Below are positions 30,012 through 35,138 of a stretch of 64,000 nucleotides of DNA, piece by piece. The notes beneath the pieces are model-generated. The model worked only from the letters and a program-made list of their open reading frames with translations. It searched no databases and was not told the origin of the DNA. Position 1 is the stretch's first letter; each line of letters begins with the position of its first letter. The stretch lies in sequence record NC_019401.1; one strand, given 5' to 3'. A program made the position numbers and the translations under genes.

Positions 30012-30447
30012 TATTATTGAAAACATTGATCCTATTAATTACATCATCCAAGATGTACTAAGTAAAATCAACGGACTTGATTTAGCTCCGCGTAACAACT
30101 TTTACATCGGTGATGGATACTCACTGGACGTACAAGAAGTAAGAAAGAATTCATACAAGTTAAAAGTACGGACACAGAACTTACAGGATCTTTGTAACAT
30201 CGGGATCGATAAGAAGAATATGATTATTCGATACAGTCCTGAATTTTTCTTTATCCACGATGGTAAAGAGTTAAGTACTAATCTGTTTGATGGTACTTTT
30301 TGTATAGAAGATTTGCCCCAGGTGTTTGATAAGAATGGTGCTGTTTTTGGCTTGCCAGTCGATTTCGACTATGATACAATGCAGCAGACGATACAAATGT
30401 GCCGTAGAGTTCACGAAGAATTCTTGCGGAAACTCGCTTCATCATAA
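30004..30447 (+). CDS. hypothetical protein
   Basis: Overlapping-start ORF in operon. Confidence 0.75.
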   Translation: MLNIIENIDPINYIIQDVLSKINGLDLAPRNNFYIGDGYSLDVQEVRKNSYKLKVRTQNLQDLCNIGIDKKNMIIRYSPEFFFIHDGKELSTNLFDGTFCIEDLPQVFDKNGAVFGLPVDFDYDTMQQTIQMCRRVHEEFLRKLASS

Positions 30448-30470
30448 TAAAAGTACTGCTCATGGATGAG

Positions 30471-30478
30471 TATAAATA
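30471..30478 (+). promoter_or_regulatory. T4-type late promoter TATAAATA
   Basis: Exact T4 late consensus in intergenic gap about 50 nt before ATG. Confidence 0.55.
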
Positions 30479-30526
30479 CTTTTAGAGCACTGGAGAGTGC
30501 ATAAAAGAGTTCAAGGGAGTGAACAC

Positions 30527-31003
30527 ATGAATATTATTCAAAAAGAGAATGGGCCGATTGATGATGTGATCACTAATGACGCCTTTGAAGTACATGGGCT
30601 AATGTTTTCTATTAAAGATATTGTACAATGTCTTTTTCTATGTAGTTCTACAATGCACGAATTTTTCAATAATCCAATGTGCAATTGTTTTGCAGTTACA
30701 GTAAACAGTACTGATAAGTGGATTATGGCAACTCCGATGACCATGAATACTGAATTTAATGAATGTGTCATGCGAAATAACAAGGGTAAAACCCCACAAT
30801 CTGAAGTAGAAAAGCTTCGGAATACTTATACTAAACCTGACGATAAACATATTTTAATGTTCTTATCTAAAGGGTACGTTATGGATAACTTTACAGTACG
30901 TGAAAGTTATCATGATTTCCTCTTTACTGAGGGCGAGCCTCATGTTATGATTACTTCAGAAGACATAGAGAGCTTAACACTAAAGAACCCATATTTGGAG
31001 TAA
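30527..31003 (+). CDS. hypothetical protein (possibly late)
   Basis: GGAG RBS; start reassigned. Confidence 0.75.
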   Translation: MNIIQKENGPIDDVITNDAFEVHGLMFSIKDIVQCLFLCSSTMHEFFNNPMCNCFAVTVNSTDKWIMATPMTMNTEFNECVMRNNKGKTPQSEVEKLRNTYTKPDDKHILMFLSKGYVMDNFTVRESYHDFLFTEGEPHVMITSEDIESLTLKNPYLE

Positions 31004-31006
31004 TAA

Positions 31007-31177
31007 ATGGCTAAGTCTAAGAAGACTGAAAAGTTAGTTGTGAATAATCCGGTTGCAAAGCACATGGAAACGTTCAACAAACCTAAAACTTTTGTTGATC
31101 AGAAGAAAGAATCTAAAAAGGGTAAGACCAAACATAAAGGACGCTATGATGCGTCCTTTGACGTTTCTGGAAAGTAA
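31007..31177 (+). CDS. 56-aa basic ArfA-like protein
   Basis: Not in ORF track. GGAG RBS; MAKSKKTEKLVVNNPVAKHMETFNKPKTFVDQKKESKKGKTKHKGRYDASFDVSGK. Confidence 0.7.
   Translation: MAKSKKTEKLVVNNPVAKHMETFNKPKTFVDQKKESKKGKTKHKGRYDASFDVSGK
31136..31166 (+). terminator. terminator-like hairpin inside the ArfA-like ORF, upstream of its stop codon
   Basis: AAAGGACGC-TATGAT-GCGTCCTTT, perfect 9-bp stem; tail TTTGACGTTT is an imperfect U tract. Confidence 0.55.
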
Positions 31178-31180
31178 TAA

Positions 31181-32068
31181 ATGTTGGATTTTAAACAGTA
31201 CTCGATAAAAGAATGTATTGAACAAGCATGTTTTGGAAAGTGGCATTCGCCTTTAATAATTGGAACTACTGAAAACAAATTCGATTCATATATCGGTCAA
31301 ACAAGTTTTACACAGTACTACACATATAATGATGAAAAATTTATGGCGTGGAGTACATGGTATGATGGTAGAGAATATGAACCGAATAAAGAATTTGAAT
31401 TCACTGTTAAAACACAAGAACCAGATTTTCGTGATCGTTCATATCATTTGCATTATATACTTCGACGATTCGATGAAATATTAGAATTAAAGAATATCGG
31501 CTTCGCATATAAAATTAAGAAAGATGGTTCAAAATATCTTAGTAAGAAACGTTACGAATTTAAAAACAAAACACTAAGAATGGATGTATTACGCAATGAA
31601 TATACTTGGTACTACGAATCTCATCAATATATGAAGAAGATTAATAAAAATAAAACATCTGAACATTATGTTAGATTCAAAGGTACTGAATTAGAAATTC
31701 GCGAGAACTATAATTCCAAGGGTGTTTGCACGAGAAGTTTGCTGCATATAGGTGATGGTAGATCCATTCAGATTCATTTGAAGAAAGGCGTGGTTTCTGC
31801 TTACTGCCAATGTGAATTTGGTACATTAAAAAATTGTACTATTAACTTGCCGTACTTAAATGATGCGTCAGTACTTAATTTGTATGATACTACGAATTGT
31901 TTTAATCTGGATTTAATGATTCCTCACAATGAATTATTTGAAGCATATACTAGTTCATTGAAATTATTAAAGCATAATATAACACGATGTGTGTATAACG
32001 ATGAACATGTAAATCCAGTACTTCGAACTATGATGGAACATATACAAGAATATGAAAAGAAAAATTAA
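31181..32068 (+). CDS. hypothetical protein
   Basis: Long ORF, Y/K-rich. Confidence 0.8.
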   Translation: MLDFKQYSIKECIEQACFGKWHSPLIIGTTENKFDSYIGQTSFTQYYTYNDEKFMAWSTWYDGREYEPNKEFEFTVKTQEPDFRDRSYHLHYILRRFDEILELKNIGFAYKIKKDGSKYLSKKRYEFKNKTLRMDVLRNEYTWYYESHQYMKKINKNKTSEHYVRFKGTELEIRENYNSKGVCTRSLLHIGDGRSIQIHLKKGVVSAYCQCEFGTLKNCTINLPYLNDASVLNLYDTTNCFNLDLMIPHNELFEAYTSSLKLLKHNITRCVYNDEHVNPVLRTMMEHIQEYEKKN

Positions 32069-32372
32069 ATTCAAAGATGGTATTCCAAAATTCATATGGT
32101 TAGGTTCACGAGGATACCCACGTGATTCAGAAAAGATGCAATACAATGATGGGTCAACTATTCATATAAGTACTGCTCCTAACTACAAGGCTGCACTAGA
32201 AAGAATTTACACATCATCTATTCATCTAAATGAAAAAGACAGTGAAAAGTATTTCTTTGCATTGTTGCAGTACTTAGATGATGAGGACGAGGATACCTTT
32301 TATCTTATGTTTGAAGATTTTAAAGAATGGCATAAGGTAATAGATATGGATCATAAAAGTGAAACAGAATAA
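32052..32372 (+). CDS. hypothetical protein
   Basis: Overlapping-start ORF. Confidence 0.7.
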   Translation: MKRKIKFKDGIPKFIWLGSRGYPRDSEKMQYNDGSTIHISTAPNYKAALERIYTSSIHLNEKDSEKYFFALLQYLDDEDEDTFYLMFEDFKEWHKVIDMDHKSETE

Positions 32373-33189: not shown

Positions 33190-33211
33190 AGGGGCTTCAA
33201 TGCCCCTTTTA
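33190..33211 (+). terminator. intrinsic terminator
   Basis: AGGGGC-TTCAAT-GCCCCT plus T run. Confidence 0.7.
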
Positions 33212-35110: not shown

Positions 35111-35138
35111 AGGACAGTATGATGTACTGTCCTTTTTT
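35111..35138 (+). terminator. intrinsic terminator or 5' hairpin
   Basis: AGGACAGTA-TGATG-TACTGTCCT plus T6. Confidence 0.75.

What the first reader, a model, noticed from the sequence alone, without database searches (positions are those of the whole stretch)
31007..31177. Phage ArfA-like ribosome-rescue factor with a terminator-like hairpin inside its ORF (non-stop mRNA control)
Seen: unannotated 56-aa basic ORF with NPVAK..FNK..F.D.KK..KKG..KHK, followed immediately, still in frame and before the stop codon, by a perfect 9-bp hairpin (31136-31159). Knowledge: bacterial ArfA and BrfA are made from non-stop mRNAs truncated by RNase III or an internal terminator, so tmRNA destroys them unless trans-translation is overloaded. 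Inference: the phage carries a rescue factor with the same sensor logic, useful when defence ribonucleases or tRNA cleavage stall ribosomes. The ArfA homology is by motif recall and is remote.
Basis: partly seen in the sequence, partly recalled or inferred. Interest (0 to 1): 0.78.

Follow-up and report, generated by a model that had tools for sequence, protein, structure and literature searches.

The report
Phage ArfA-like small protein, in-frame terminator
A 56-residue basic protein of jumbo phage GAP32 belongs to a large uncharacterised family (DUF7230) that looks and is wired like the bacterial back-up ribosome-rescue factors ArfA/BrfA, with a conserved RNA hairpin placed inside its own reading frame, but neither rescue activity nor stop-less transcripts have been shown.

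Summary
The ORF 31007-31177 (+) and a perfect 9-bp hairpin (31136-31159) before its stop codon are real. The ORF is already annotated, as GAP32_059, a hypothetical protein of Cronobacter phage vB_CsaM_GAP32.

The protein is a clear member of Pfam DUF7230 (E 4e-18). It does not match ArfA in any direct test.

The hairpin starts at the codon after the family's near-invariant Lys-His. In relatives it is kept through many compensatory base changes while the encoded peptide drifts, so selection acts on the RNA.

The layout recurs across the family:
- Bacterial chromosomal DUF7230 genes (Methylococcales) carry 20-24 bp hairpins inside the ORF, as arfA does.
- Other phage lineages carry unrelated terminator stems at the same place.
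- A few ORFs run into a tRNA gene.

One phage protein (J2-1) passes the Pfam cut-offs of both ArfA and DUF7230. It is the only bridge between the families.

Best reading (about 0.45): a distant ArfA-like, release-factor-dependent rescue factor with BrfA-style control by an internal terminator.

Main weaknesses:
- In half of the close relatives the stop codon directly follows the stem.
- Most phage members have no hairpin.
- No transcript or activity data exist.

Canonical ArfA genes have already been noted in phages. The link to DUF7230 appears to be new.

The parts
30997..31000 (+). Shine-Dalgarno-like GGAG, 6 nt before the ATG
   Evidence: Read directly from the sequence. It overlaps the end of the upstream ORF GAP32_058, whose stop is at 31001-31003.
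31007..31177 (+). ORF GAP32_059: 56 aa, basic, a DUF7230 family member
   Evidence: annotated CDS; Pfam PF23876 at E 4.1e-18 and 65.7 bits against a cut-off of 27; phrog_1359; single copy in the phage genome.
31040..31150 (+). Stretch matching the DUF7230 profile (residues 12-48): NPVAKH..FNK..TF.D.KK..K.G..KHK
   Evidence: Columns invariant or nearly so in the family: N14, V16, K18, N24, D31, K33, G39, K42, H43.
31073..31075 (+). Codon of Phe23, invariant among close relatives. It is a candidate counterpart of ArfA Phe25, which sits in a pocket of RF2.
   Evidence: In both proteins 18 residues separate this Phe from Lys-His (GAP32_059 F23/K42-H43; E. coli ArfA F25/K44-H45). The equivalence is inferred, not shown.
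31130..31135 (+). Codons of Lys42-His43, the family's near-invariant KH motif
   Evidence: A KH motif contacting 16S rRNA U534 is shared by ArfA and BrfA (PMC6881298, PMC8012679).
31136..31159 (+). Hairpin inside the ORF: perfect 9-bp stem (31136-31144 / 31151-31159) and 6-nt loop, covering codons 44-51 (KGRYDASF)
   Evidence: -13.8 kcal/mol. The stem is kept in relatives with different stem sequences. Codon-anchored stem positions 6-9 each show three pair types. The orthologous hairpin is annotated as a terminator in Salmonella phage Munch.
31157..31168 (+). Interrupted T-rich tail (TTTGACGTTTCT) after the G+C-rich core of the stem. As a U-tract it is weak.
   Evidence: It falls just below the terminator scan's rule of 5 T in 8 on the + strand. 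Relatives have much stronger tails, such as TAATTTTTTTT.
31160..31177 (+). Five sense codons (DVSGK) plus TAA, lying beyond the hairpin. A transcript ended at the hairpin would lack them.
   Evidence: This tail is absent or different in relatives, where the stop lies 0-26 nt after the stem. The next gene, GAP32_060, starts at 31181.

Best explanation
GAP32_059 is a small basic protein of the DUF7230 family. [quoted passage not shown]

Proposed mechanism, all of it inferred:
1. The Lys/Arg-rich C-terminal half, with its near-invariant Lys-His, enters the empty mRNA channel of a ribosome stalled at the 3' end of a truncated mRNA.
2. The conserved N-terminal half (NPVAKH..FNK) recruits a release factor, which frees the peptide.

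Proposed control:
1. Its own message carries a hairpin like an intrinsic terminator, starting at the codon after Lys-His. This much is shown.
2. Transcripts ending there would lack the stop codon, which lies 15 nt further on. This is inferred.
3. The roughly 52-residue product would then be tagged by tmRNA and degraded while trans-translation has spare capacity. It would accumulate when ribosome rescue is overloaded during infection.

This is the layout of B. subtilis brfA and of several arfA genes.
For: 1. Family. It is a clear DUF7230 member. The family is large: 583 representatives at 50% identity with E < 1e-3. It occurs in many phages and in chromosomes of Gammaproteobacteria.

2. Selection on the RNA in the focal clade.
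- The stem always starts at the codon after KH.
- The stem sequences differ: GGACGC, GGACGTG, GGGAACTG, GGTAGAGA, GGGCGC, GACGAGA, GGAAGC, GGAAGAG. Pairing is kept in all of them.
- The peptide over the stem is not conserved: GRYDAS, GRGWDTS, GTDYDSS, GRDWFSA, GRIDAL, RRDMFSS.
- Most relatives have a T-rich tail after the stem.

3. The same layout in unrelated lineages.
- L029 and L146 have different terminator stems right after KH, and the ORF runs on for 9-14 mostly hydrophobic codons.
- Ten Methylococcales chromosomal genes have 20-24 bp hairpins (-26 to -47 kcal/mol) starting 2-3 codons after KH. Of 21 pairs, 14 show compensatory changes.
- Three phage clusters have a tRNA gene overlapping or abutting the ORF end.

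4. Enrichment of hairpins that start between KH and the stop, against control ORF ends in the same loci.
- All clusters, -15 kcal/mol or stronger: 19% vs 6% (p = 0.001).
- All clusters, -20 or stronger: 11% vs 1% (p = 2e-5).
- Bacterial copies alone, -20 or stronger: 50% vs 2%.

5. True ArfA genes show the same layouts, including terminators right after the basic motif (L095, L097).

6. Sequence links to ArfA.
- Phage J2-1 protein passes both Pfam cut-offs on overlapping residues: ArfA 41.3 bits, DUF7230 28.6 bits.
- Bacterial-type DUF7230 against ArfA by hhalign gives E = 0.031, in the register Y / RK / KH / EA.
- The only six-frame hit of the DUF7230 model in E. coli K-12 lies inside arfA.
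- 84 of the 100 nearest named Atlas clusters carry the ArfA family.

7. ORF ends. 11 of 155 family ORFs end in Ala-Ala, against 0.7 expected. Two Pseudomonas-type ArfAs also end this way.

8. Five DUF7230-bearing genomes have no ArfA above the cut-off.
Against: 1. No direct similarity of GAP32_059 to ArfA.
- The ArfA Pfam model finds nothing in the protein or the whole phage genome at E <= 10.
- hhalign of the phage-type alignment gives E 0.24-0.33, probability under 1%.
- The PDB profile search is empty.
- The ArfA model against GAP32_059 does no better than against shuffles, p = 0.38.
- None of 102 family members hits ArfA.
- The DUF7230 model misses ArfA in five other ArfA-bearing genomes.
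- The bridge is one singleton protein.

2. In 8 of 16 close relatives the stop codon follows the stem directly or lies in the U-tract. Terminated RNA there may still carry the stop.

3. GAP32's own T-tract is weak.

4. In phages the tail hairpin is a minority trait: 29% of clusters against 16% of controls.

5. The next gene starts 4 nt after the stop, so read-through must be frequent.

6. There are no transcript-end, tagging or activity data. The only public runs that hold this sequence are metagenome contigs, and they say nothing about 3' ends.
Confidence: 0.45

Rival explanations
1. An ordinary leaky intrinsic terminator, or a hairpin that stabilises the 3' end, closes or attenuates an early transcription unit. 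It overlaps the unconstrained C-terminal tail of a small basic protein whose function has nothing to do with ribosome rescue, for example nucleic-acid binding. The overlap reflects tight gene packing, not a sensor.
For: - In half of the close relatives the stop codon abuts the stem.
- The Munch annotators called the hairpin a plain terminator.
- Genes here are packed 1-4 nt apart.
- Most phage family members have no such hairpin.
- GAP32_059 shows no direct similarity to ArfA.
Against: - It does not explain why unrelated stems, long hairpins and tRNA genes all begin within a few codons of KH, before the stop, in separate lineages.
- It does not explain the enrichment over control ORF ends.
- It does not explain the excess of Ala-Ala ends.
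- It does not explain the J2-1 protein that matches both families.
Confidence: 0.3
2. The protein binds the empty mRNA channel or A site as ArfA does, but serves the phage in another way. It might block host tmRNA-SmpB or ArfA, or silence or hibernate ribosomes, rather than recruit a release factor.
For: - The basic tail with KH suggests binding in the channel (PMC6881298).
- The N-terminal half (NPVAKH..FNK) differs from ArfA's RF2-binding segment and gives no ArfA signal.
- The host Cronobacter already has its own ArfA (P0117, P0120).
Against: - Chromosomal copies sit among housekeeping genes in bacteria that lack ArfA. That fits a cellular rescue role better than an inhibitor.
- The arfA-like self-limiting gene layout makes most sense for a back-up rescue factor.
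Confidence: 0.13
3. The hairpin is an RNA processing or stability site, cut or bound by RNase III, RNase E or a phage factor. It sets the relative amounts of upstream and downstream message and has no effect on the fate of the protein.
For: - The stem is symmetric (AAA...TTT), and the scan scores it as a terminator only on the minus strand.
- The stem is conserved without a consistent distance to the stop.
Against: - Nine to ten base pairs is short for RNase III.
- Most relatives have a T-rich tail typical of intrinsic terminators.
- Cleavage there would still remove the stop codon in GAP32, which gives the same stop-less outcome.
Confidence: 0.07

Closest known systems
ArfA (alternative ribosome-rescue factor A, Pfam PF03889; E. 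coli YhdL)
   Same: - Size of 50-70 aa with a very basic C-terminal half.
- A Lys-His motif, and an invariant Phe 18 residues upstream of it, as in E. coli ArfA.
- A hairpin inside the ORF a few codons after KH, with dispensable codons beyond it.
- Some ArfA genes (L095, L097) carry an intrinsic terminator right after the basic motif, the same layout as here.
- One phage protein (J2-1) scores above the threshold for both families.
   Different: - No significant direct sequence or profile match.
- The KGKGSY signature is missing: GAP32_059 has KKGKTKHKG.
- The N-terminal motif is NPVAKH..FNK, not the ArfA pattern.
- The stem is 9 bp with a weak T-tract, not the long RNase III hairpin of E. coli arfA.
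- Function is untested.
BrfA (Bacillus ribosome-rescue factor A; PMC6881298)
   Same: - A rho-independent terminator inside the coding region, about 9 codons before the stop.
- The product of the truncated mRNA is controlled by tmRNA.
- Lys-His contacts 16S rRNA in the mRNA channel.
- The spacing is comparable: BrfA has KH at 49-50 and a product of about 62 aa; here KH is at 42-43 and the predicted product is about 52 aa.
   Different: - No sequence relationship was detected: a Pfam scan at E <= 10 gives only DUF7230.
- BrfA has N-terminal helices that have no counterpart here.
- The GAP32 T-tract is weak, and termination has not been measured.
Canonical ArfA genes already noted in phages
   Same: These are phage-borne small rescue-factor genes: Citromicrobium phage RXM g10 (PMC8953757), pelagiphage HTVC027P gp30, which is transcribed early and late (PMC12753301), and Pseudoalteromonas phage J2-1 (GenBank annotation). 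RXM also has a strong hairpin inside the ORF.
   Different: They match PF03889 directly, and GAP32_059 does not. Neither of the two papers read here (PMC8953757, PMC12753301) analysed function or stop-less control, and neither mentions DUF7230.
ArfT (Francisella; KGG-repeat family, PMC6299226, PMC6514570)
   Same: A very small basic protein (40 aa) that recruits release factors to ribosomes on stop-less mRNA.
   Different: - Its motif is different (KKGGSTNKK).
- It is reported not to be regulated through a truncated mRNA.
- No match to GAP32_059 turned up in the Pfam scan.

Membership tests
DUF7230 (Pfam PF23876) | Match to the family profile above the curated cut-off | tested here: met
   65.7 bits against a cut-off of 27, E 4.1e-18, residues 12-48. 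Confirmed by six-frame search of the genome. All 102 aligned relatives match it too.
ArfA (Pfam PF03889) | Match to the ArfA profile, or a significant profile-profile match | tested here: not met
   - No hit at E <= 10 in the protein or the whole phage genome.
- hhalign E 0.33 and 0.24.
- ArfA model against GAP32_059 in the shuffle test: p = 0.38.
- The only indirect links are phage J2-1 passing both cut-offs and bacterial-type DUF7230 against ArfA at E 0.031.
ArfA (Pfam PF03889) | KGKGSY.RK.KH signature in the C-terminal tail | tested here: inconclusive
   GAP32_059 has KKGKTKHKG: KKGK and KH are present, GSY.RK is absent. Bacterial DUF7230 has K[ST][QK]Y.RK.KH, which is closer to ArfA.
ArfA / BrfA (functional class) | Conserved Lys-His in a basic C-terminal tail (contact with 16S rRNA U534) | tested here: met
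   K42 and H43 are at least 90% conserved in 30 close and 102 distant relatives. The role of the motif is taken from PMC6881298 and PMC8012679. Contact with rRNA was not tested here.
ArfA / BrfA (functional class) | Hairpin or terminator inside the ORF, upstream of the stop codon, conserved in relatives | tested here: met
   The hairpin is at 31136-31159, 15 nt before the stop. It covaries in the clade. Caveat: in 8 of 16 relatives the stop directly follows the stem.
ArfA / BrfA (functional class) | mRNA actually truncated before the stop; product tagged by tmRNA and degraded | not testable with these tools
   No infection transcriptome exists. The runs that hold the sequence are metagenome contigs.
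ArfA / BrfA (functional class) | Release-factor-dependent peptidyl-tRNA hydrolysis on stop-less ribosomes; synthetic lethality with ssrA | not testable with these tools
   This needs bench assays.
BrfA | Sequence relationship to B. subtilis BrfA | tested here: not met
   Pfam and NCBIfam scans at E <= 10 return only DUF7230. The PDB sequence and profile searches, which include chains of ribosome-rescue complexes, return nothing relevant.
ArfT / KGG repeat | KGG-type repeat motif | tested here: not met
   No such Pfam hit. The motif named in PMC6299226 (KKGGSTNKK) is absent.

The most novel reading that the evidence does not exclude
DUF7230 is a previously unrecognised, mostly phage-borne class of release-factor-dependent ribosome-rescue factors, either a deep branch of ArfA or an independent invention. 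Its members make their own stop-less mRNAs in three interchangeable ways: an intrinsic terminator inside the ORF (GAP32 clade, L029, L146), a long RNase III-type hairpin (Methylococcales chromosomes), or a tRNA gene that begins inside the ORF, so that RNase P would cut off the stop codon (phage tRNA arrays, L024/L031/L129). Phages would carry it to keep ribosomes free when mRNA decay or host nucleases flood the cell with truncated messages.
Probability: 0.3. Interest if true: 0.8.

Novelty: new variant of a known kind. Interest (0 to 1): 0.66.

Why it matters
Only four kinds of back-up rescue factor are known (ArfA, ArfB, ArfT, BrfA). Reviews expect more small factors that homology searches miss (PMC8012679).

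If DUF7230 is one, three things follow:
- A Pfam family with hundreds of sequence clusters and no known function would get a function.
- Bacteria without ArfA, such as Methylococcales and SAR86, would get a candidate rescue factor.
- Many phages would be shown to bring their own factor.

It would also show that one control principle recurs with different RNA devices: make the factor from a message without a stop codon, so that tmRNA destroys it unless rescue is overloaded.

The claim can be tested directly with standard E. coli genetics (ssrA arfA synthetic lethality) and purified translation systems.

Tried and rejected
- **Direct ArfA membership: rejected.** Pfam, NCBIfam, six-frame genome search, BLASTP (E 0.29), hhalign, PDB sequence and profile searches were all negative.
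- **The DUF7230 model hitting arfA in E. coli.** It looked striking, but it did not repeat in five other ArfA-bearing genomes. I treat it as weak.
- **Mutual exclusion of ArfA and DUF7230 in genomes.** They occur in 6 and 9 of 401 sampled Gammaproteobacteria with no overlap, but both are too rare for this to mean anything.
- **Synteny with mscL, as for E. coli arfA.** Not found. The Methylomicrobium gene lies between uppP and mnmG-rsmG.
- **Further bridge sequences.** The J2-1 protein has no close relatives in the protein collection or in phage records.
- **Transcript evidence.** Only metagenome contigs hold the sequence. Their breaks at 31139-31158 coincide with the stretch conserved among co-occurring strains; I read them as assembly junctions, not RNA ends.
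- **Alignment-based pair counting.** The MAFFT alignment of the short hairpins was out of register, so I counted pairs by codon-anchored position instead.
- **ArfT identity.** Rejected: ArfT belongs to the KGG-repeat family (PMC6514570).
- **Structure prediction.** Not run. ArfA-like peptides are disordered off the ribosome, so a model would not discriminate.

Full report
**Where the window comes from.** The window is the first 64 kb of Cronobacter phage vB_CsaM_GAP32, a 358,663-bp jumbo myovirus of genus Mimasvirus. Window and record coordinates coincide.

**The observation.**
- The ORF at 31007-31177 (+) encodes 56 residues. GGAG lies 6 nt before its ATG.
- It is not unannotated. GenBank lists it as GAP32_059, a hypothetical protein.
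- The hairpin is as described: arms 31136-31144 and 31151-31159, a 6-nt loop, in frame, 15 nt before the TAA.
- The local fold has z = -3.56.
- Perfect stems of 9 bp or more are over-represented in the window: 14 against 3.1 in shuffles. With 5 or more G-C pairs the count is 4 against 0.2.

**What the protein is.**
- It matches Pfam DUF7230 (PF23876) at E 4e-18, and phrog_1359.
- Nothing turns up in NCBIfam or in PDB sequences.
- The ArfA profile (PF03889) finds nothing in the protein or anywhere in the phage genome, even at E <= 10.
- A profile search of 1.8 billion representatives finds 583 clusters at E < 1e-3. Nearly all are 40-80 aa. The consensus is N[PFL]VAKH..FNK..TF.DRKK..K.G..KHK, followed by a variable tail.
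- Members occur in many phage contigs and in chromosomes of Methylococcales, SAR86, Pseudomonadales and others.
- GAP32 has one copy.

**The hairpin is selected as RNA.**
- Sixteen orthologous genes from related jumbo phages and metagenomic contigs all have a stem of 8-10 bp that begins at, or within 2 nt of, the codon after Lys-His.
- The G+C-rich cores differ: GGACGC, GGACGTG, GGGAACTG, GGTAGAGA, GGGCGC, GACGAGA, GGAAGC, GGAAGAG. Loops range from 4 to 12 nt.
- The encoded peptide drifts: GRYDAS, GRGWDTS, GTDYDSS, GRDWFSA, GRIDAL, RRDMFSS.
- Counted by codon-anchored position, stem positions 6-9 each show three pair types.
- Most relatives follow the stem with a T-rich tract such as TAATTTTTTTT. 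The Munch annotators marked theirs as a terminator.
- GAP32's own tail (TTTGACGTTTCT) is weaker and just fails the scan's rule on the + strand.

**The same layout across the family.** I grouped 189 family loci into 80 clusters.
- L029 and L146 have unrelated terminator stems immediately after KH. Their ORFs then continue for 9-14 largely hydrophobic codons.
- Ten Methylococcales chromosomal genes have 20-24 bp hairpins (-26 to -47 kcal/mol) starting 2-3 codons after KH and ending 6-25 codons before the stop. Of 21 consensus pairs, 14 show compensatory changes.
- In Methylomicrobium the gene lies between uppP and mnmG-rsmG, so it is a chromosomal gene among housekeeping genes. These genomes have no ArfA above the cut-off.
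- In three phage clusters a tRNA gene overlaps or abuts the ORF end. tRNA-Ala starts 15 nt before the stop, right after KH-R. tRNA-Tyr starts 36 nt before the stop. tRNA-Lys starts 3 nt after it.

| Hairpins starting between KH and the stop | DUF7230 | Control ORF ends, same loci | p |
|---|---|---|---|
| All clusters, -15 kcal/mol or stronger | 19% | 6% | 0.001 |
| All clusters, -20 or stronger | 11% | 1% | 2e-5 |
| Bacterial copies, -20 or stronger | 50% | 2% | 2e-6 |
| Phage clusters, -11 or stronger | 29% | 16% | 0.012 |

The signal is strong in bacterial copies and modest in phage clusters. Many phage members simply stop 2-10 codons after KH.

**Comparison with real ArfA genes.**
- The same pipeline on PF03889-positive genes finds hairpins inside the ORF in most bacterial examples.
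- Two of them (L095, L097) have intrinsic terminators starting right after the basic motif.
- One (L094) has a tRNA gene about 8 nt after the stop.
- Two Pseudomonas-type ArfAs end in ..LAA. Of 155 DUF7230 cluster representatives, 11 end in Ala-Ala, against 0.7 expected. A C-terminal LAA is the ClpX recognition signal of the SsrA tag (established knowledge). It suggests that read-through products are also unstable. This does not apply to GAP32, whose tail is DVSGK.

**Is it homologous to ArfA?**
- Directly, no. hhalign of the phage-type alignment against ArfA gives E 0.24-0.33. The ArfA model scores GAP32_059 no better than its shuffles. None of 102 members hits ArfA.
- Indirectly, there are leads:
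  - The bacterial subtype carries K[ST][QK]Y.RK.KH, close to ArfA's KGSY.RK.KH. It aligns to ArfA at E 0.031 in that register. Its model beats shuffles for 12 of 18 ArfA sequences, many of which are related to each other.
  - The ArfA-annotated protein of Pseudoalteromonas phage J2-1 passes both Pfam cut-offs on overlapping residues.
  - 84 of the 100 nearest named clusters in the protein atlas carry ArfA, at a lead-only score.
  - The single E. coli six-frame hit of the DUF7230 model lies in arfA, but this did not repeat in five other genomes.
- I conclude that remote homology of the C-terminal half is plausible but unproven. The resemblance in gene layout is much better supported than the resemblance in sequence.

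**Literature.**
- ArfA and BrfA share a Lys-His contact with 16S rRNA U534.
- Both are made from stop-less mRNAs: arfA through a hairpin and RNase III, brfA through a rho-independent terminator inside the ORF (PMC6881298, PMC8012679).
- ArfT belongs to the KGG-repeat family and is unrelated (PMC6299226, PMC6514570).
- Canonical ArfA genes have been noted in phage genome papers without functional study (PMC8953757; PMC12753301, which reports transcription).
- No paper in the library mentions DUF7230.

**Mechanism proposed, and its limits.**
- Shown: family membership; the conserved KH; a covarying hairpin inside the frame, directly after KH; the recurrence of this layout in the family and in ArfA genes.
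- Inferred: binding in the mRNA channel; recruitment of a release factor; termination at the hairpin giving a stop-less message; control by tmRNA.
- Main doubts:
  - In 8 of 16 close relatives the stop codon abuts the stem, so terminated RNA may keep it.
  - GAP32's U-tract is weak.
  - The next gene starts 4 nt after the stop, so read-through must be common.
  - No transcript or protein data exist.

**Verdict.** Its interpretation is partly supported and, through the family-wide pattern, better grounded than motif recall alone. Phage-borne ArfA as such is not new. Assigning DUF7230, and with it GAP32_059, to the ArfA/BrfA functional class appears to be new and is readily testable.

Noticed in passing
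L024 1144-1311 / tRNA 1294-1369; L031 ORF end 1229 / tRNA 1212-1287; L129; L121 and L148: Some DUF7230 ORFs in phage tRNA arrays run into a tRNA gene. tRNA-Ala(tgc) starts 15 nt before the stop, directly after KH-R. tRNA-Tyr starts 36 nt before the stop. tRNA-Lys starts 3 nt after it. RNase P processing would remove or expose the stop codon.
   Followed up: partly
L056, L058, L059, L069, L070, L072, L073, L074, L083 (Methylococcales chromosomes): Chromosomal DUF7230 genes carry a 20-24 bp hairpin inside the ORF (-26 to -47 kcal/mol; 14 of 21 pairs covary) followed by a hydrophobic tail. In Methylomicrobium lacus the gene lies between uppP and mnmG-rsmG. No ArfA was found in these genomes.
   Followed up: yes
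L216 683-838 (Pseudoalteromonas phage J2-1, ATN93434.1): This 51-aa protein, annotated as ArfA, scores above the curated Pfam cut-offs of both ArfA (41.3 bits) and DUF7230 (28.6 bits). It is a hybrid-looking singleton with no close relatives in the collections searched.
   Followed up: yes
L219 617-841 (Salmonella phage Arash gp99c); L218 about 695-838 (Pseudomonas phage pf16): Both are clear ArfA homologues (67.8 and 72.5 bits to PF03889). The Arash gene is annotated as 'ribosomal protein L2'. The pf16 gene is not annotated at all: it sits between gp199 and gp198 on the opposite strand to gp199.
   Followed up: partly
Protein ids P0156, P0173, P0180, P0188, P0196, P0268, P0271, P0274, P0277, P0280, P0288; ArfA loci L093 and L096: 11 of 155 DUF7230 cluster representatives end in Ala-Ala (0.7 expected), and two Pseudomonas-type ArfAs end in ..LAA. 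This resembles the C-terminal degron of the SsrA tag.
   Followed up: partly
L094 140-256 and downstream: A short bona fide ArfA (38 aa, ending ..SRKSKHR) is followed about 8 nt after its stop by what looks like the 5' end of a tRNA gene. This was read by eye, with no tRNA scan.
   Followed up: no
window 31136-31159, minus strand: The consensus scan scores the same symmetric hairpin (AAA...TTT) as terminator-like on the minus strand only, although all annotated genes here are on the plus strand.
   Followed up: no
window 30400-32100 in runs X4 and X5: Contigs from wastewater runs labelled as RNA break at 31139-31158. The pieces differ by up to 44 letters, so several related phages co-occur. 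I read the breaks as assembly junctions at the conserved hairpin, not as transcript ends.
   Followed up: partly
window 33190-33207 and 35111-35133: Two further G+C-rich hairpins with T-tails lie between genes and look like conventional terminators. The first is annotated as one in GenBank. They contrast with the position of the 31136 hairpin inside an ORF.
   Followed up: no
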